Origin: Podarcis cretensis
Lineage: Eukaryota
DNA length: 64,000 bases
NCBI GenBank assembly: GCA_951804945.1
Contig: OX638151.1
Location: 61,132,001-61,196,000 of the forward strand
Direction of reading: 5' to 3'
Both the position numbers and the translations under genes were made by a program. Each line of letters begins with the position of its first letter. Within the stretch, counting starts at the first letter, position 1. Below the pieces are notes generated by a model that saw only the letters and a program-made list of their open reading frames with translations, had not been told where the DNA came from and did not search any database. This document shows positions 951 through 16,485 of this stretch, piece after piece.

Positions 951-1397
951 TAAAGAAAAAAATCTTGCACATACATTAAGGAGCAAGTCTGTGCCCTTGG
1001 TCCTACCCCAAGCATTGGACACACTAGTTGGCCCCACTCTAAATGCTGGCATGGACATCAGGGCAACGCAGCATGTACAATGTCAGGAGCAGGCCCAAGA
1101 CCATTGTGCCAGTCTTTAGTAATCACGTGATTTTCCTTTCCCATAAACAGTATGTGGAGGGTGGCCTTTTAGTTATGTTTCAATATATGAAATCGCTGCT
1201 GTGTAACAAATTCAAGGCAGCGTTGTACTAGGATTGTGTGACCATGCTAGAAAAACTGGCGCCTATGAATCAAGGGGCAATTTTGTAACATTTAGAAATA
1301 CATTGAATTTCCTTATGCTTATACCCAAGTTAGAATGTTTGGGGGAAATAATCACCATTTTTAATACTATTCTAATATTTTGCTTCAGTTTCTAGTA

Positions 1398-2125
1398 CCG
1401 TATTTTTTGCCCTATAGGACGCACTTTTTCCCCTTCAAAAATGAAGGGGAAATGTGTGTGCGTCCTATGGGGCGAATGCAGGCTTTTGCTGAAGCCTGGA
1501 GAGCGAGAGGCGTCGGTGCGAACCGACCCCTCCCCCTCTCCAGGCTTCAGGAAGCTATCCGCAAGCCTTGCGAGCCCGGGGGGAGTTCCCGCGGGCTCGC
1601 AAGGCTTGCGGGCGGCAGCCTGCAGCTCAAAGCATGGGGCGCCCTCCGGAGGATGCCCCGTGCTTCGCGCAGGTGTCCGCAAGCCTTGCGCGCCCGGGGG
1701 GAGTTCCCCCTGGGATCGCAAGGCTTGCGGGCAACAGCCTGTTCTGGGGGCTGGGGACGGGGGAAGCTCGGGCTTCCCCTGCCCCCAGCTCCCAGCAACG
1801 CAAGCAAGCTCCGGGAGCGATGGCAAGGTTGCAAAACCTCGCCATCGCTCCCGGACCTGTTCTGGGGGCTGGGGATGGGGGAAGCTCGGGCTTCCCCTGC
1901 CCCCAGCCCCGCAAGCTCCGTAGCGATGGTGAGGTTGCGCAACCTCGCCTTCACTCCTGGACCCCCAGCCCCGAGGATAAAAACAAAGTCAGGACAGCGA
2001 GCTTCTTTGCTCTTTGGGGCTGGGGGGGGGGAATAAATTTTTTTCTTTATTTCCCCCCCCAAAAAAAAAAAAAAAAAATAAGTGCGTCCTATGGGCCGGT
2101 GCGTCCTATAGGGCAAAAAATACAG
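1398..2125. mobile_element. Non-autonomous TcMar (Tc2-like) MITE, GC-rich, inserted in a splice donor
   Basis: 27-bp TIRs C(C/T)GTATTTTTTGCCCTATAGGACGCAC; TA TSD at 1396-97 and 2126-27; internal hairpin modules. Confidence 0.9.
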
Positions 2126-2128
2126 TAC

Positions 2129-2314
2129 CTTTAATGAATCTTCCTGAGTAGAAAAATCTTCATAGACACCAGAATGAAGTTCTGGAGCATTCAGCAAGAG
2201 CTCAGCATCAGCTATAGCCAGCAAAATCTTGTTAATTTCAACCAGGTATTCTGCAGGGAATGGAGATGCCCTCGTTGTTGATGAGAGGGGACCTTGAATC
2301 TTCTGCAAGACTGC
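2129..2314 (-). CDS. UTRN: UTRN exon (DMD ex42 equivalent)
   Basis: 186 nt, tag|...|gtactg; AVLQKIQGPLSSTTRASPFPAEYLVEINKILLAIADAELLLNAPELHSGVYEDFSTQEDSLK. Confidence 0.95.
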
Positions 2315-2392
2315 CTAAAGAAAAATAAACTTAAGCTTAGCTCTTTTAAAATAACTTCAGTATAAGATAAAAACAAATTTCATTTATTTGTA

Positions 2393-2612
2393 CAGTGGAC
2401 CCTTCAGATATAAACTTAATTCGTTCCGGGGGTCCATACGTACCCCGAAAAGTCCGCATCTAGAGGCGCCGCTTCTGCGCATACACAAAGCACACAGAGC
2501 GCTTCTGCGCACGTGCATGTGGCAAAACCCAGAAGTATACACTTCAGGGTTTGCCGCATTAGCAACCCGAAAGTTACATTACCCAAAGGTAACACAACCC
2601 GAAGGTCCACTG
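2393..2612. mobile_element. Tigger/pogo-like MITE
   Basis: TIR CAGTGGACC.../...GGTCCACTG with TA TSD; internal inverted repeats. Confidence 0.8.
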
Positions 2613-3171
2613 TATTTGCTTTATGTCCTATCTTTCAGGTTCAATGCAGATTAAAGCCTTTTTTTAAAGTACTGAACTGAAAAATAAGGTATTAAAATAT
2701 ACCAGATAAAATCAAGTTTTTAAAATTGAAATCCTATCCCCAAAACTAAAAATCCCTGCCATGTGACTCATTGTTATAATCAGAAGGAAGTATATCTACT
2801 TTGTCCAGAGCAGGTACACCAATAACTTACTTTCTTTAAAATGAAACACCCTATATACCAATACAAATATACTCCAGTCAAGCAAGCATCACCTCTTCTC
2901 AATTTATCAGCTCCAGTTATGGGGAAAGAGTGGAGATAGCCCACCCTAAATTAACAAAGTCTTTTCCCAGGTTCTCGAAATGTGGACATTCATTTTTATA
3001 ATTCTCAGTTGGCGTGGAGGCTAAGGCATGCCCATGATGACTTCTGACATTTTATGTCTATAGACACAGTAAGCTAAGTAAAAAGAGAACACTAAAAAGC
3101 ATGTTTTCCTACAGATAGCAAGAGCTTCCTCAAAATAGGAAAGGAGCTATACAACAAGGTTAAAACATATA

Positions 3172-3428
3172 CCGTATTTTTCGCTCTATAAGACTCACCA
3201 GACCGTAAGACGCACCTAGTTTTTGGAGGAGGAAAACAAAAAAAAATATTCTGAATCTCAGAAACCAGAACAACAAGAGGGATCGCTGCACAGCAAAAGC
3301 AGCAATCCCTCTTGCTGTTCTGGCTTCTGGGATAGCTGTGCAGCCTGCATTCACTCCGTAAGACACACACACATTTCCCCTTACTTTTTAGGAGGGAAAA
3401 AGTGAGTCTTATAGAGCAAAAAATACGG
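3172..3428. mobile_element. TcMar (Tc2-like) MITE
   Basis: TIR CCGTATTTTT(C/T)GCTCTATAAGACTCAC at both ends; TA TSD. Confidence 0.88.
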
Positions 3429-6400
3429 TAACTTTATTCCATACAGAGCATATCATTGTTTGGGGAGCTTCTTTCTCCTTCTTTAAAGCAGAAAGCATCA
3501 GGAGGAATGTGGGAAATAAAAGTACTTTGAAGTGCTGTGCCTGAGCCCCATCAACTTCTGGAAAACCATGAGTTCCCCAACTCTAGTCTAAAAGAATCAA
3601 TTAGACAAATTCATAGAGATTAGAGTTCATAGAGTTCTGAATAGCATAATAGTTGAACTTAAGCACCATAAGCTGATGTTGATAAACAACAGTAAATGGT
3701 CACCTTCATGCCTTGCTTCCAGAGGCATCTGGTTCATTGCTGCTGGAAACATAACACAGGACGAGACAGACCTTGGTCAGATCCCCAAAAGCAGTTCATT
3801 CAAAAGGGAACAGCAATTATCTGCTACTGTTCATCAAAGTTGTATTCTGTCCTTCCTCCAAGGAGCTCAGTTTGGTGTATGAATGATTACCAAGCCAACC
3901 TTATAACAGATGCAATGAGCTAGATAATACAGTATCCCCAACTGGCTAATCACTAAAAGATGAAGCCAATCAAAACCAGGCACAAAAATATGGTTTATTC
4001 CTTTTCTGAATCACCATATACAGAATTGCATCTTCATCAGAGTCCAGTGCAGAGTGAAGGTCAATTGCTGTTTTGTCACCTACAGTATGCCAAAAATTAA
4101 TGAAAACCTCAAACCTCAGCAGCCTTATGTTCAAGGTTCAATTCAGAGAAGACAGCAACTATGATTTTCCAGATCCTACACAAACAAAGGGCATTTGAGC
4201 TAGAAAAATAGACTGGGGCAATTCATATAAAATATTTTTAAAATATAAACCGCAAACCAATGGTTAATACTTGGTGCAGCTCTACACACGCAAATCCATC
4301 TTTTTGATTTCTCTTCATTTACTTGAGCACTACCTGTACAAAGGAGAATGGGGGTGACAATCAGGCTCCCACCCTGTCTGATATTTGCATGCTGACATCA
4401 ATTCTTAACAGGAGGTTTCCTATGTGAAGTCCAGTATGCAGAAGGGAGGTGATTTGCTGCTACAAAGCAACGACTGGTACTTTTCCTAAATACATTTTCT
4501 GTGGGGTAAAACTGATCCAAACCTGTTGCAGGCCACCTTCACTCATATTAATTCACCAATTTCAGCCCTTTTTGTAAGAAAATAATTGTGACCCATTCTC
4601 CTCACACTATCATCCCAACCTAAATTCCCTGACTTTAAAGCTGCTGTTAGCTCCATGGGAAGAAATGGAAGTAGCTGCTGACAAAACAGGGCACTAAATT
4701 GGGAGGACTTTAGGCATCATTATTCTATGCTGCATAAGCTTGAATTTGAGTCTTTCACATTCTATGTTCTCCTCAATAATTGGCTCTGGGCTTTAAAGTT
4801 ATAGGAGAGTCATAAAGAGATTGATTCATTTAATTATAAAGTCCCATAACCAGAAATGCAAAAGTATTTGACAGATTGCCTAATGCACAGGCTTGTCCAA
4901 AAAATTACTTACTGCTTCAGACAACTCCTCACTATTATATAAAATATAACAACAATTCTTATGACAGACTAAATATTTGAGAAAAGTGGACGCATTAGAA
5001 ATGGAAAATGAAAAGCTTTGTATGTATGAATAATTGAAACAGACAAGCTTTCTGAAGTCAGTATCACAGTACTGCACTCAATAAAATTCTCACAAATATT
5101 TGACTAAACAGCAGATTTTAATACATCCAATTTAAACACATCCAAAATAAAATCATAAGGAGTCAAATCAAAATCGGATCAGGGGATCACTTGACCCAGG
5201 GCTTACCAAGGCTCAAGAAACTGCCCAGAAGCATAGCAGGATATGACCCTTCTCCTTTGGTCATGCTCACCTGTGAGCAAAATCTGAACACAAGGAAAAG
5301 TTGAAAGGCCCAGGAAAAGCCTTAAGAAGAGATGGCTAATGAACAGAGATAAAAATAATCACAGATTCCCCTTCATAGATATCACAGTTGTCCTGAGGCC
5401 AGAGAATTGAAGAGTAGCACATTCCAGCTTTTGCCAACAGCCAGGAAACCTAGGGTCACTACCTCCCGAAAGAAACATTGAGGCAACAGGGAGACCAACT
5501 GGCCCTTACCATCAGCCAAATAAGAAGCAGATACAAAGAGCTCACTTCTCCCCATCCTGCCTGAAAAAATACTCAGCTTTAGCTGTGTTTAGCCCCTGGG
5601 ACTGCTAAAGTAAGAAGAAAGAACACAGGCCTCATCCATTGGCCAAAGGGACCAAAGTCACCAATTGCTATTCAAGCAGATGAAGAACAACCTTGCCTGA
5701 ACTGGATATAAAGGCCCTCTCACAGCTCACCACTTTGTTCTGGTTTTGAATAATCTCCCTCCTTCACCTTTTCCTTTTTCTCCTGCCTTTTTACCATAGT
5801 TTATAAACCAAATGACAGGGTCTTTCTCTCATTCTCTCTCTTTCGTCTGTCCGTCCCCCCCCCCCTTTGATTAATATGAGACACATTAGCAGACAATTAT
5901 CTGAAAAACAAGACTGAAAATATAGTAAATAGATAAAGAAAATCCACTTCTTTCAAGATTTCACATGCTATTGATAAATAATTTATATGAAATGAAGCAA
6001 CCTGAATGTAAGTAAATATGCTTTCGAATCTGATCTTTCGCTACCCTGTATGGATCTAGCCTCAAAACTCAGTCATAACATTGCTGGATCCACTCACAAC
6101 TGAATGTGTTAATGGCCAATGTAACATTTCAAAAAGAGATGGCAAGTTCTTGTAGCCCAATTATAGGAATGTGTCCTCTTCCTTAGTGAGGTCTAAAACA
6201 TTAAACTCCAGCTAGATGGACAGATCCTCTATCAGCGTCCTTTACCACAGGGTAAATTTTCTGCAGTGGTCCATTTTAGAATTTATTGACAATTTTATTT
6301 TGTCAATAATATGATGACATTATTGACAAAAAAACTAAAAAAAAAAACCCATCCTCTAGCAACAGTTACAGTACTAGTAGTGAAAGTATATTGGCTAGGT

Positions 6401-6463
6401 GGTCTGTTAGTGTAACTTAAGGGGAAAGTTTTTTTAAAAAAATTCACAATAAATAAGATTTAC

Positions 6464-6616
6464 CTGCAACCTCCCCTCATCTTCTGCTTCCTCTGTTCCA
6501 GAAAGGCTTCCATCTGTCTCACTGAGCCAGTGCAAATGACTGTCTTGTTCTGTCTTATATTGAGAGAATGAAGGGGACAGCTCCACCACCTGTCTCCTTT
6601 GTAACGACCTAAGTTT
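6464..6616 (-). CDS. UTRN: Extra UTRN exon homologous to DMD exon 40 (not in canonical human utrophin); probable cassette exon
   Basis: 153 nt, phase 0/0, ttcattctttgcttatag|...CAG|gtaaat, no stops; KLRSLQRRQVVELSPSFSQYKTEQDSHLHWLSETDGSLSGTEEAEDEGRLQ. Confidence 0.8.
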
Positions 6617-7723
6617 CTATAAGCAAAGAATGAAGGGAATATAAAGCAAACAGTTGACAGAAGCAGCAGGAAAGCAGTTGTGTATGTTCAATCACAGATG
6701 TTTAGAATCTACAAAAGAAGTGCAAGGTGAAATGGCAAAAGTATTTGTTGACAATTACGACCCAAAACAACATCTGCCAGGGAGCTGGGTTGATATTGCA
6801 TGCTGCCACAATCACCAATTTCTGTCTTAACACAGATTGCCTTATTTGAAAAATAATTCTACCAAGGATCAAATTTGCCTATTTCCCAGGCACCAAATTT
6901 AAATGGTTCCCCAATCCTTGGCTGGAGGTGGGGTTCCTTGAAGGCATCTGAGGCTAAACAGGATCTTGCCAGGTTGAAGAAGAGGCTTCTCAAATGCTGA
7001 ATGGTACATCAGTAATCCAGAAATTTTAAAAAATGCAACCCCTCTTCTGCCCCACCCCCATTTCCCTTACCACCATGTTGGTGTAAATTAAGTTGTGGCT
7101 GGGGGCGGGGGCTAATACCTACTCAGTTTCTTTGAGCTTAATATGGAACTCTCTGGTTCCATTGGGGAAGACAACAGGGAATTAGAAACAGGGCTCTGCC
7201 TTTCATCAGTCGCAGACAAGAATAAAAGAGCTGAACAATTTTACCCAATATTAACATTTTTAAAAAAATATGGAGGCAATTGCAGATCTAATTGGCCCCG
7301 ATCCCTCATGCAGTTTCAATGGCACATGCACTTATAAGCATATTTTCTTTCTTCTATTGAAAGTGGGTGAAGAGCTGACTCAGAAGATCAAATTCATACA
7401 GAAGAATAATTGTGTGCAGAGAGTACTGGGTTTTGGGCAGAACTAAAACATTTAATGACTAATTCATCCATTTAACCATCCTGGTTTCAGGGTGACAAGA
7501 GAAAAGATTCCAATATATCAGAAGTGGGAAGCCATGTGCACCTGGCTTGAAAAGACATCTATGTCAATGAAATGAAAAATCAGAAGTTGGACATGGGTGT
7601 GTGCATGAGAGTTACAGAGTTTTCTGATGCAGGCAGGCACATGTTGCTTGGGAGAGAGGAAACTATACTGCAGATGTCTGTCCTATTGGATGGGTGGGTG
7701 GGGGGAGAACACAATAGCTTTAC

Positions 7724-7861
7724 CTTAGCGCTGCTTTGCCTGGTCTGCAGAAGCAGAAGCTGCAAACGAATTCTCTCATGCCTGCTCTCTTCCATTGGCT
7801 GTTGCAGTAGCTTTTCACCTTTTTGTAGAACATCCTCAATTTGAGCCCTCTCTTCATCCAA
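7724..7861 (-). CDS. UTRN: UTRN exon (DMD ex39 equivalent)
   Basis: 138 nt, tag|...|gtaaag; [46 protein letters not shown]. Confidence 0.95.
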
Positions 7862-8200
7862 CTAAAATGATAACGGCACAAGAACGCTAAACAGTTAATG
7901 ATACTTTAAGGGAAAATATTCCCCCTCCTCCCAAAATGGATATAACAGGCAGTATTCAACCAAAATAAAAATAAAAATGCATGAACAGAACAACTTCCAT
8001 TTGCGTAATGGGACTCTTCCTTCTCCCAACCACATCCACCCTACACCTTCCCAAAATCTGCTCTAGAATGTTGGGGAAATCCCCAAAAAAGGTTTAGGGG
8101 GGCACAGGGGGAGGAAAGGATGGAAAGTCCCTTTCTGCAGCAGAATTCATTCCGCTCACATAAGTGCTACACCAAACACAACCCAGTATCTGTGAAGAAA

Positions 8201-8309: not shown

Positions 8310-8465
8310 CTTTTCATCATCTTCATGTGATTCCATATGTTTCTCTACAACCTTCAGCATATCCTGTAACTCACTTTCAAATTTATCAATGTCTGCAGAA
8401 TCCACTGCAATTCCATGGGTCCCTTGCTTGACAAACACTTTATGAGCCTCCTGACTGAAAAGCAT
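8310..8465 (-). CDS. UTRN: UTRN exon (DMD ex38 equivalent)
   Basis: 156 nt, cag|...|gtgtgt; MLFSQEAHKVF...DIDKFESELQDMLKVVEKHMESHEDDEK. Confidence 0.9.
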
Positions 8466-9420
8466 CTGATGGCAAATGGGAAGACAAAAAACACACATTG
8501 ATTAATGCCTAAATAACTGCATCAGTAAAGTTGCAAATGAACATCACGTTCAGAATCAGATTTTGCAGTGTAGGGGAACTTCGGCTACAGATTATCCTGT
8601 TTCACTGGCTCAGTTGAAAAACGAAAAATACTAAACTGCACCTAAGAACGCAGAATAAGGCTGAGAGTGATAAGCTGATCCCCATTCCCAGAGACCCAGG
8701 CTAAGGAAATGCCTAGTCATGAGTAATTGGAATACTCAAGGCCTAGCTTATATGCTTCTGGAGAGTTGGAGGCATATGAAAAGCCAATGGGTGATATCCA
8801 GTTGTAACAGCCTGTTCAAGGAACAGCCATTCTGCAAGTGGGAGCCTCATTCTTAGTGCACTGCAACAGTTGTATCCTGTAAAAGATGTTGCACAACCAC
8901 TATTATTATGATACTTGGTGACAGTTAAGCTTGTGTGATACCACTTGTTCAAGAACAAGTTCTCAGTCATCTTGTGCTAATGTTATGTTGGATCTCAAGC
9001 TTAGTGTTATGTACCCTTTCCACTAGGACTGGTAGTATTTTGTAAATTAAATGCGTGTGGGCTTTTTAAAAAAAGAACACCCAAGAAATATCACTTAAAC
9101 AATATATCTTGTCAAAGGCAAGCAGATATTTGTTTGTCAATGTACAGTAATGTACTATCTTTCTCTAAGTTATCATCAAAACCTTTCTCCCCAGCCCAAA
9201 AAAATTAATCATAACCAACCAGCTCATCAATAAAATACTAAGAAGCAGCTTCCCTACCACATACACTTCTTATCAAAATAGGAGTTTGCACCTAGCTGAG
9301 CTCTAAAAATAACTAAGTAGCATTCATTCCACCAAAGCATTAAGAACCGATCAAGGATCTTAAGGGGAATGTAAGTGTGCAAAATCCAGTCAATATGGAC
9401 ACATTACCCAAGGGCTGTTA

Positions 9421-9675: not shown

Positions 9676-9805
9676 GCCAGTTGATATGCACATTAACTGC
9701 TCAACTTACATTCCCCTTAACATATGGACTTCAAAATGGGAAGAAATCAATGCTTTGGGATCATGAAGCAACATCCTTGTTTTGCACAACATCTTCCATC
9801 CTCAC

Positions 9806-9976
9806 CTTAGCACTTCTGATGTGCTGCGATACCTTCTCAAAGTTCCTGTTCAGTTCAGCCAGCTTGGGCTCTACCAGCTCACGGCATGACACACCACGGC
9901 CATTCATCAGGATAATAGCTTGGTCACGCACATTATCTACTCTGAGACTAACATCATCCAATTCTGATGTTAGACG
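9806..9976 (-). CDS. UTRN: UTRN exon (DMD ex37 equivalent)
   Basis: 171 nt, cag|...|gtgagg; [25 protein letters not shown]...[12 protein letters not shown]. Confidence 0.96.
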
Positions 9977-10147
9977 CTGAGAAGAGGGGAAAAACAGCAC
10001 AAGCTTAGTGTTCAGTACACAGCAGGATAAAACAGGGTGGGAGTGTAGCAAGAGAGTTATCAACCAAGAGATTTGGCGGAGTTTAATTTGGAACCAAAAT
10101 ATACTATTACTGTATAAGCCATGTCAGTAAGAGATTAGGTTTGCCAC

Positions 10148-10276
10148 CTTCACTGTCTCTTCTTTCTTGCTGGCTGGCTTTTTCTCAATCTCATCCAACA
10201 GGGCTTCAGCTTGGTACAGCCAAGTGCTTATGTGGGCGACATTCTCATCAAAAATTTCCAGTTGACTTTGGTGATT
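10148..10276 (-). CDS. UTRN: UTRN exon (DMD ex36 equivalent)
   Basis: 129 nt, cag|...|gtggca; [43 protein letters not shown]. Confidence 0.95.
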
Positions 10277-12858: not shown

Positions 12859-13038
12859 CAAAAGTGTATTGCACCAATCTTCCGTCCAAGTTCGGACTCT
12901 ACTCCATCCAGCATTAAGAACACAGAGCTTTTCCTCCAAAGTCGTCTCACTGCCTTCCACTAAAGTTTGAAGTACAGCGCTACTCTCTGTTACACTGTTA
13001 AGATCAACCTTCTTCCTTTCCAGTTCTCTCAGCACATT
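12859..13038 (-). CDS. UTRN: UTRN exon (DMD ex35 equivalent)
   Basis: 180 nt, tag|...|gtaagc; [20 protein letters not shown]...[16 protein letters not shown]. Confidence 0.96.
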
Positions 13039-16314: not shown

Positions 16315-16485
16315 TTTAGCCCATGCGATTTCAGTGTCCAGATCAGTGAGCAAACTCTCTGAGGTGGACTTGTGCACTAACTCAGCCTCCGTAGCCTCTA
16401 GCCATTTCGACAAGGAAAGAGAGACTTCCTTGAGCTTACATGACAGCTGCAATGCCTGCTCCAAATCTTGCTTCCCTTCAGTGAC
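16315..16485 (-). CDS. UTRN: UTRN exon (DMD ex34 equivalent)
   Basis: 171 nt, cag|...|gtaaga; [15 protein letters not shown]...[10 protein letters not shown]. Confidence 0.96.

What the first reader, a model, noticed from the sequence alone, without database searches (positions are those of the whole stretch)
6464..6616. Utrophin retains an exon homologous to dystrophin exon 40 (half of spectrin repeat 15, absent from mammalian utrophin)
Seen: a 153-nt open exon, phase 0/0, with a good pyrimidine tract, TAG acceptor and CAG|GTAAAT donor. Established: utrophin has 22 spectrin repeats against dystrophin's 24, lacking R15 and R19. Recalled: in human UTRN the homologues of the two flanking exons are adjacent (...HTRYNKIK / AIPIQQ...). 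DMD exon 40 is also 153 nt, and its recalled peptide DLRSQRRKKALEISHQWYQYKRQADDLLKCLDDIEKKLASLPEPRDERKIK aligns without gaps to this one at about 16/51 identities (LRS, E.S, QYK, D..L..L, E..DE). I found no intact DMD exon-41 counterpart in 2315-6463. Inference: R15 was lost stepwise, and this lizard keeps an orphan half-repeat, possibly a regulated cassette acting as an extra flexible insert in the rod.
Basis: partly seen in the sequence, partly recalled or inferred. Interest (0 to 1): 0.8.

Follow-up and report, generated by a model that had tools for sequence, protein, structure and literature searches.

The report
Utrophin exon matching dystrophin exon 40
This is a real, expressed 153-base coding exon of the lizard utrophin gene, the counterpart of dystrophin exon 40; frogs and other lizards have it too, so the half-repeat is an old tetrapod feature that textbook (mammalian) utrophin lacks, not a peculiarity of this lizard.

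Summary
Window 6464-6616 (minus strand) is an open 51-codon exon, phase 0/0, with a pyrimidine tract, an AG acceptor and a CAG|GTAAAT donor.

- **Expression:** spliced RNA contigs from two closely related organisms join 7724->6616 and 6464->2314 exactly. No exon lies between 6464 and 2314.
- **Conservation:** the exon is kept in an agamid lizard protein (68% identity), in a frog utrophin fragment (43%), and in at least two further unnamed groups of sequences. The frame and the donor are intact in all of them.
- **Match to dystrophin:** against all PDB sequences the peptide's only hit is full-length dystrophin. Its best stretch is residues 1864-1912, without gaps, right after the counterpart of the upstream exon. 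That is the place of DMD exon 40.
- **Missing half:** the frog protein lacks about 62 residues there relative to dystrophin, the size of DMD exon 41.

So non-mammalian tetrapod utrophin keeps the first half of repeat 15 and lacks the second half. The "this lizard" framing is too narrow. The cassette idea has no support so far. The order of a stepwise loss is plausible but not shown.

The exon already sits in public protein records, though without a utrophin name. I found no paper that remarks on it. Interest is moderate.

The parts
6464..6616 (-). 153-nt utrophin coding exon, 51 codons, phase 0/0. It is the counterpart of dystrophin residues 1863-1913 (DMD exon 40): the end of repeat-14 helix C plus helix A of the former repeat 15.
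   Evidence: sequence, frame; spliced contigs in X5 and X13; orthologues; alignment to dystrophin
6617..6641 (-). 3' splice site: pyrimidine-rich tract ending in TAG
   Evidence: the joint is used
6458..6463 (-). 5' splice site GTAAAT following CAG
   Evidence: the joint is used. The Q|V read-through in unnamed ORFs of other species shows the donor is conserved.
7724..7861 (-). Upstream utrophin exon, 138 nt, end of repeat 14 (LDEERAQ...[12 protein letters not shown]). It is the counterpart of the dystrophin stretch ending at residue 1862.
   Evidence: (collinear alignment to dystrophin ...LLQTKHNALK)
6617..7723 (-). Intron of 1107 nt between the upstream exon and the exon in question
   Evidence: joint 6615/7723. 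The one-base offset is explained if the relatives' exon starts with G instead of A.
2315..6463 (-). Intron of 4149 nt, where a DMD exon-41 counterpart would lie. None is spliced in.
   Evidence: direct joint 6463->2313 in two runs; no recognisable rod-like open stretch; the frog protein also lacks about 62 residues here
2129..2314 (-). Downstream utrophin exon, 186 nt: a linker plus helix A of the next repeat (FPAEYLVEINKILL...QEDSLK). It is the counterpart of dystrophin about 1978-2039 (DMD exon 42, start of repeat 16).

Best explanation
Window 6464-6616 (minus strand) is a normal, conserved, spliced-in coding exon of utrophin. It is the orthologue of dystrophin exon 40. It encodes the last turns of helix C of spectrin-like repeat 14, a conserved Ser-Pro break, a short amphipathic helix with an invariant Trp (the old helix A of repeat 15), and an acidic tail. 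The counterpart of DMD exon 41 (helices B and C of repeat 15) is absent from the mRNA, so the segment cannot form a three-helix bundle by itself. Together with the roughly 20-residue linker at the start of the next exon, it most likely forms a partly helical, partly flexible spacer of about 70 residues between repeat 14 and the next full repeat. This arrangement is shared by a frog and by lizards, so it is ancestral for tetrapods. Mammalian utrophin, as described in the literature, has lost this half as well. Shown here: exon structure, splicing, conservation, and collinear similarity to dystrophin 1863-1913. Inferred: constitutive use, the flexible-spacer role, and the order of losses.
For: - Splicing. 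A 3781-nt contig (X5, organism A) and a 424-nt contig (X13, organism B) join 7863..7723 -> 6615..6463 -> 2313..2129.
- Changes in these relatives, worked out: three synonymous and one Ser->Asn inside the exon.
- Conservation: Phrynocephalus forsythii KAJ7342012.1 carries the upstream exons followed by this exon (68% identity, E 6e-13). One search, the Staurois parvus partial protein P0021 reads ...LLLLQTRYNSVK | 50-aa homologue | linker + DYLVEINK.... One search, it hits window 6616-6458 at E 1.6e-7.
- Ten further unnamed ORFs keep S14 P15 Y20 K21 S26 W30 L31 E33 S39 G40 and the ..Q|V donor, and similarity stops at the exon end.
- Dystrophin: the only PDB hit is full-length dystrophin 9c3c_D. 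The best stretch is 1864-1912, gapless, 10 bits, while the starts of other repeats score 0 bits or less.
- a collinear alignment of the agamid fragment plus orthologues to dystrophin 1742-1915, E 1e-17.
- frog residues 2-75 match dystrophin 1840-1914 (E 0.001) and 92-194 match 1993-2095, so about 62 dystrophin residues have no counterpart.
- in the register fixed by synteny, 15 of 49 identities has P about 6e-5 even with a generous match probability of 0.10.
- Structure. AlphaFold models of the frog and agamid fragments continue the preceding helix through the first 12-13 exon residues (pLDDT about 85), break at Ser-Pro, then place a helix of lower confidence (pLDDT 54-76). In the agamid model the exon's acidic tail and the non-native read-through residues after it are disordered (pLDDT about 35). 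In the frog model the tail stays helical and the linker of the next exon is disordered (pLDDT under 50).
Against: - The exon alone is only weakly similar to dystrophin (E 0.54 against PDB).
- A profile of the last 41 residues of the orthologues does not find dystrophin at all.
- Pfam sees no spectrin repeat in any of the three exons taken singly.
- The RNA evidence comes from assembled contigs of two related organisms, not from raw reads of the window's own organism. It cannot show inclusion levels or rule out a skipped isoform.
- The invariant Trp across more than 300 million years argues that the helix packs against something, which fits a simple floppy spacer poorly.
- The structure models have modest confidence (pTM 0.37-0.40).
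Confidence: 0.8

Rival explanations
1. The exon is a regulated cassette, included in some tissues or stages and skipped in others, tuning the length or flexibility of the utrophin rod.
For: Its length is a multiple of three and its phase is 0/0, so skipping keeps the frame. Mammals live without it. Runs X1 and X9 gave no contig across the junctions.
Against: Both contigs that cover the region include it, and no 7724->2314 joint was seen. The donor CAG|GTAAAT and the pyrimidine tract are close to consensus. The frog and agamid gene models include it. Contigs cannot show minor isoforms, so this remains untested rather than refuted.
Confidence: 0.15
2. The segment is not a passive spacer. It is a functional module: the orphan helix A packs onto a neighbouring repeat or binds a partner protein, which is why its Trp and several other residues are invariant.
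For: S14, P15, Y20, K21, S26, W30, L31, E33, S39 and G40 are invariant from frog to lizards. The W-L-x-E pattern is the helix-A signature seen at other repeat starts of dystrophin (domains 1, 2, 4, 5). Dystrophin's own repeat 15 has Cys at that position, so the utrophin remnant is the more canonical of the two.
Against: No partner or packing was shown. AlphaFold confidence in this helix is only 54-76. The coordinates could not be inspected for contacts.
Confidence: 0.3
3. The exon arose by exonisation of intron sequence in utrophin and only resembles DMD exon 40 by chance, through generic coiled, charged composition.
For: Exon-only similarity to dystrophin is weak (E 0.54). A profile without the first 10 residues misses dystrophin.
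Against: It has the same place between the exon-39 and exon-42 counterparts, and the same 51-residue length as the matched dystrophin stretch 1863-1913. The alignment is gapless and end to end. The best-scoring place in a 3696-residue protein is exactly the syntenic one, 10 bits above any other repeat start. The alignment runs collinearly across the exon junction. The fixed-register P is about 6e-5 or lower. The exon is already present in a frog.
Confidence: 0.04
4. It is a dead relic or a chance open frame that is not part of any mRNA.
For: None after testing.
Against: Spliced contigs in two organisms. Frame and donor kept in a frog, an agamid and several unnamed lineages.
Confidence: 0.01

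Closest known systems
Dystrophin (DMD) exon 40: residues 1863-1913, end of repeat 14 and helix A of repeat 15
   Same: Same position between the counterparts of exons 39 and 42. Same 51-residue span and phase 0/0. Gapless alignment with 15/49 identities (LRS, E.S, QYK, D..L..L, L, DE). The flanking exon sizes also match as I recall the DMD exon table: 138, 153 and 195 nt there, against 138, 153 and 186 nt here.
   Different: In dystrophin it is followed by exon 41, which completes the three-helix bundle. Here it is not. Dystrophin has Cys where utrophin keeps the canonical helix-A Trp. The utrophin version has an acidic tail (net charge -4), whereas dystrophin repeats 11-15 are described as basic and actin-binding (PMC10789850).
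Mammalian utrophin rod (22 repeats, described as lacking dystrophin repeats 15 and 19)
   Same: Same gene, and the same flanking exons. The upstream exon is 66-70% identical to wallaby and rodent utrophin fragments. The exon-41 counterpart is missing in both.
   Different: According to the literature (PMC10789850) mammalian utrophin has no sequence corresponding to repeat 15 at all. Lizard and frog utrophin keep its first half. I did not check mammalian genomes for a remnant.
Hinge and linker segments of the dystrophin/utrophin rod (H2, H3, and the short insertion between dystrophin repeats 15 and 16)
   Same: It is a non-repeat stretch between two full repeats. It contains Pro and Gly, and part of it is predicted to be disordered. 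It sits next to the linker at the start of the exon-42 counterpart.
   Different: It derives from a truncated repeat, not from a proline-rich hinge. About two thirds of it is predicted helical. No flexibility measurement exists.

Membership tests
Utrophin (UTRN) coding exon | Lies in order and on the same strand among exons that match utrophin better than dystrophin | tested here: met
   minus-strand exons at 16315-16485, 12859-13038, 10148-10276, 9803-9979, about 8310-8468, 7724-7861, 6464-6616 and 2129-2314 match fragments that include 'utrophin-like' from Notamacropus eugenii (70% in the upstream exon). Dystrophin aligns more weakly.
Utrophin (UTRN) coding exon | Spliced into mRNA at the predicted sites | tested here: met
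   contigs of X5 and X13 carry both junctions. They come from close relatives (about 97% identical), not demonstrably from the window's own organism.
Orthologue of DMD exon 40 | Same position relative to the counterparts of DMD exons 39 and 42 | tested here: met
   the upstream exon ends at dystrophin 1862, this exon matches 1863-1913, and the downstream exon matches about 1978-2039.
Orthologue of DMD exon 40 | Same length and reading phase | tested here: met
   51 codons, phase 0/0, against a gapless dystrophin span of 51 residues. That DMD exon 40 is 153 nt and starts at codon 1863 is recalled, not tested.
Orthologue of DMD exon 40 | Sequence similarity beyond chance | tested here: met
   On its own it is weak (E 0.54, though it is the only PDB hit). 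Frog residues 2-75 against dystrophin 1840-1914 give E 0.001. The fixed-register binomial P is about 6e-5 or lower. An exon-only profile lacking the first 10 residues fails.
Complete spectrin-like repeat (Pfam PF00435, three-helix bundle) | Helices A, B and C are all present | tested here: not met
   about 62 dystrophin residues (1915-1992 against frog 76-91) have no counterpart; direct splice to the next repeat's exon; no Pfam match for the exon, although single exons of true repeats also gave none, so that test has little power.
Alternatively spliced cassette exon | Both the inclusion and the skipping isoform are observed | tested here: inconclusive
   only inclusion was seen, in two runs. 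Assembled contigs drop minor forms, and no raw reads were available.

The most novel reading that the evidence does not exclude
The orphan helix A of the lost repeat 15 has kept its Trp, its Ser-Pro break and its acidic tail from frogs to lizards. It may be a functional module of non-mammalian utrophin, either a docking site or a helix that packs onto a neighbouring repeat. Its loss on the mammalian line would then have changed the mechanics or the partners of the mid-rod.
Probability: 0.2. Interest if true: 0.55.

Novelty: new variant of a known kind. Interest (0 to 1): 0.38.

Why it matters
The standard statement that utrophin has 22 repeats and lacks dystrophin repeats 15 and 19 comes from mammals. 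Here a lizard, an agamid and a frog all keep the first half of repeat 15 as an expressed exon and lack the second half. The mammalian architecture is therefore the end of a longer history. A truncated repeat has been tolerated, and kept under constraint, for several hundred million years. This gives a natural example of what a rod made of spectrin-like repeats can tolerate in the middle, a question that matters for designing shortened dystrophins and utrophins. It also corrects a mammal-centred domain map. It is not a new kind of gene or mechanism, and the exon is already present, without comment, in public protein records.

Tried and rejected
**Searches that led nowhere**
- Pfam scan of the three exons taken singly: no family. 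Single exons are too short for this test.
- PDB search with the upstream exon alone: no dystrophin hit. Its homology only showed through the longer agamid fragment.
- Exon-only profile without the first 10 residues: no dystrophin hit. The top hits were eIF5 at E 0.26 through a WL.EAE..SG motif, which I judged to be chance.
- Two further word searches, aimed at fish, bird or other named fragments across the junction: nothing new.
- Rfam scan of 2000-8000: only sub-threshold miRNA-like hairpins inside an intron repeat.
- Paper searches: no paper mentions this exon in non-mammalian utrophin.

- Full-length utrophins of reptiles, birds, amphibians and fish could not be reached. The word search only takes candidates near the query's length, and no long query was available.
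The unnamed ORFs could not be placed on contigs or assigned to taxa, and no squamate DNA alignment or dN/dS was possible.
- The other phmmer hits (P0002, P0005, P0006, P0009) are repetitive, unrelated proteins. P0003 was scored but had no aligned stretch. I rejected all of them.
- P0015 looked like a primate, possibly human, utrophin transcript. I set it aside and did not compare or search with it.
The natural spliced proteins P0001 and P0021 served instead.
- I did not look for a remnant in human intron sequence.

Full report
**1. The observation**

Window 6464-6616 read on the minus strand is 153 nt and translates into 51 codons without a stop. It is preceded by a pyrimidine-rich tract ending in TAG and followed by GTAAAT after CAG.

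Two more minus-strand exons flank it.
- 7724-7861 is 138 nt and encodes LDEERAQ...[12 protein letters not shown].
- 2129-2314 is 186 nt and encodes AVLQKIQ...FPAEYLVEINKILL...QEDSLK.

The donor of the downstream exon is AAAG|GTACTG, so that exon ends at 2129. All three exons are phase 0/0.

**2. Which gene**

It maps a collinear series of minus-strand exons at 16315-16485, 12859-13038, 10148-10276, 9803-9979, about 8310-8468, 7724-7861, 6464-6616 and 2129-2314.

The upstream exon is 70% identical to a wallaby protein that its source names 'utrophin-like'. It is 66% identical to a rodent fragment and 80% identical to an agamid lizard fragment. Dystrophin aligns to the same stretch, but more weakly. 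The gene is utrophin.

**3. Is the exon used?**

I laid the contigs of four RNA-type public runs on window 2100-7900.
- In run X5 (organism A), a 3781-nt contig lies on 7863..7723, then 6615..6463, then 2313..2129.
- In run X13 (organism B, another study), a 424-nt contig does the same.
- Both skipped stretches have GT..AG ends on the minus strand.

A contig that lacks both introns must come from spliced RNA. The exon is therefore part of the mRNA in two close relatives of the window's organism, and nothing is spliced in between 6464 and 2314.

The upstream joint is reported one base off (6615/7723). This is what one expects if the relatives' exon begins with G (Glu, as in the agamid and the frog) instead of A (Lys). 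That explanation is an inference.

Inside the exon the relatives differ from the window at four places: three synonymous third positions and one Ser->Asn. Intron pieces in the same runs differ by 2-3%, so these relatives are too close to measure constraint.

No 7724->2314 joint was seen. Assembled contigs drop minor forms, so a skipped isoform is not excluded. Runs X1 and X9 gave no contig across the junctions.

**4. Conservation**

A phmmer search of 1.84 billion representative proteins with the 51 residues gave four real hits.
- KAJ7342012.1 of Phrynocephalus forsythii (P0001, 195 aa) carries the upstream exons followed by this exon (68% identity, E 6e-13).
- Three unnamed short ORFs from raw assemblies read the exon and then run on into the intron.

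A word search with an alignment of these added more unnamed ORFs. It also added P0021, an NCBI partial protein of the frog Staurois parvus. P0021 reads ...LLLLQTRYNSVK, then a 50-residue homologue of the exon, then a short linker and DYLVEINKVLL..., the next repeat. P0021 matches window 6616-6458 with E 1.6e-7.

Across frog, two lizards and ten unnamed ORFs, the residues S14, P15, Y20, K21, S26, W30, L31, E33, S39 and G40 do not vary. The last residue is followed by V (a GT donor) in the unnamed read-through ORFs, and similarity ends at the exon boundary.

The exon is therefore under purifying selection, and it is at least as old as the split between amphibians and amniotes. The unnamed ORFs fall into two groups. 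One is close to the lizards. The other is large and diverse and is closer to the frog.

**5. Relation to dystrophin**

The PDB copy holds a full-length dystrophin sequence, 9c3c_D, of 3696 residues.
- The downstream exon matches residues 1994-2039, the start of repeat 16 (E 0.0015).
- The 51-residue exon has a single hit in the whole PDB, and it is this dystrophin. Its best stretch is 1864-1912, without a gap, at 10 bits. The starts of four other repeats score 0 bits or less.
- A profile containing the agamid fragment aligns collinearly to 1742-1915 (E 1e-17). The exon part follows directly on ...LLQTKHNALK | DLRSQRRKK....
- The frog protein gives two collinear stretches: 2-75 on 1840-1914 (E 0.001) and 92-194 on 1993-2095.

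The 16 frog residues 76-91 stand where dystrophin has 78. About 62 residues are missing, which is the size I recall for DMD exon 41 (183 nt, 61 codons).

The register is fixed in advance by synteny, so there is no multiple testing. In that register, 15 identities in 49 columns has P about 6e-5, even with a match probability of 0.10, which is above the exon's own compositional self-match of 0.095.

There are weaknesses. The exon alone reaches only E 0.54. A profile of the last 41 residues misses dystrophin. Taken together with place, length, phase and collinearity, orthology with DMD exon 40 is still well supported. That DMD exon 40 spans codons 1863-1913 is my recollection of the DMD exon table. 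It fits the alignments exactly.

**6. What the segment is likely to do**

AlphaFold models were made for the two natural spliced fragments.

| Feature | Frog P0021 | Agamid P0001 |
|---|---|---|
| pTM | 0.37 | 0.40 |
| Preceding helix continues through the first 12-13 exon residues | yes (pLDDT about 70-80) | yes (pLDDT about 85) |
| Break at the conserved Ser-Pro | yes | yes |
| Second helix, containing the invariant Trp | residues 43-74, pLDDT 54-76 | residues 151-167, pLDDT about 54 |
| Disordered part | linker of the next exon, pLDDT under 50 | acidic tail, pLDDT about 35 |

The lizard exon has a basic start (+3 in the first 12 residues) and an acidic end (-4 in the last 13), with a net charge of -4.

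My best reading is this. The exon extends the last helix of repeat 14 and adds the old helix A of repeat 15. Helices B and C are missing, so it cannot fold into a repeat. Together with the adjacent linker it acts as a partly helical, partly flexible spacer of about 70 residues in mid-rod. This part is inference.

The invariant Trp suggests that the helix packs against something. I therefore give real weight (0.3) to a rival reading in which the segment is a docking or packing module.

**7.

The homology call is supported, and so is the absence of an exon-41 counterpart.
- The claim that 'this lizard keeps' the half-repeat is too narrow. A frog has the same state.
- 'Stepwise loss' fits the data. 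The half-repeat state is old and widespread, and the literature describes mammalian utrophin as lacking all sequence corresponding to repeat 15 (PMC10789850). But I saw no utrophin with a full repeat 15, so the first step is inferred from dystrophin as the outgroup.
- 'Regulated cassette' has no support so far.

**8. Novelty**

The exon is already contained in public protein records: a 'hypothetical protein' of Phrynocephalus and an 'unnamed protein product' of Staurois. It is very likely also in the pipeline gene models of lizard genomes, which I could not reach.

Four full-text searches found no paper that mentions it. The comparative study of the dystrophin family that I read deals with promoters and C-terminal splicing, not with this region (PMC1790709).

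It is a variant of a known architecture, not a new kind of thing.

**9. Limits and steps left out**
- The word search could not reach full-length utrophins.
- P0015 looked like a primate, possibly human, transcript and was set aside.
- No human sequence was searched.
- No DMD exon-41 query was run on the intron, because no reference for that stretch was held.

Noticed in passing
window 3167-3431: An intron stretch is covered at very high depth (thousands to tens of thousands) by many short, diverged RNA contigs in all four runs, with varied loose ends. This looks like an abundant interspersed repeat. Its core at 3254-3336 (minus strand) folds like a hairpin and gives only sub-threshold miRNA-family matches (mir-1954 at 32.7 bits against a gathering score of 99).
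   Followed up: partly
window 6029-6070: A 42-nt piece of the intron matches a contig of high depth (300-4900) in all four runs. The foreign flanks are identical on both sides in every run. It appears to be a short shared segment with an abundant transcript from elsewhere in the genome. It was not identified, and Rfam has no match.
   Followed up: partly
window 1396-2128: Directly after the donor of exon 2129-2314 come long T and G runs and a GC-rich element whose two strands give similar long open frames, so it is an inverted-repeat-like insertion. In run X5 the contig leaves the window sequence exactly at 2129 and continues for 23 nt, so this donor is used in a close relative. Whether that relative carries the insertion is unknown.
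   Followed up: partly
P0007, P0008, P0011, P0012, P0016-P0019, P0022, P0023 (unnamed ORFs): A large, diverse set of unnamed assemblies carries the exon in the form MELSPVFSQYKKEHDSLMKWLNEAEDRLSGLQGVEDEQKLQ followed by intron read-through. One cluster was seen on 105 contigs. This clade is closer to the frog (51-59%) than the lizards are (44%). It may be birds or another slowly evolving, much-sequenced group, but the taxon could not be determined.
   Followed up: partly
window 6616 (first base of the exon): The upstream splice joint in both RNA contigs is reported one base off. This suggests that the relatives have G instead of A at the first exon base (Glu instead of Lys, as in the agamid and the frog).
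   Followed up: no
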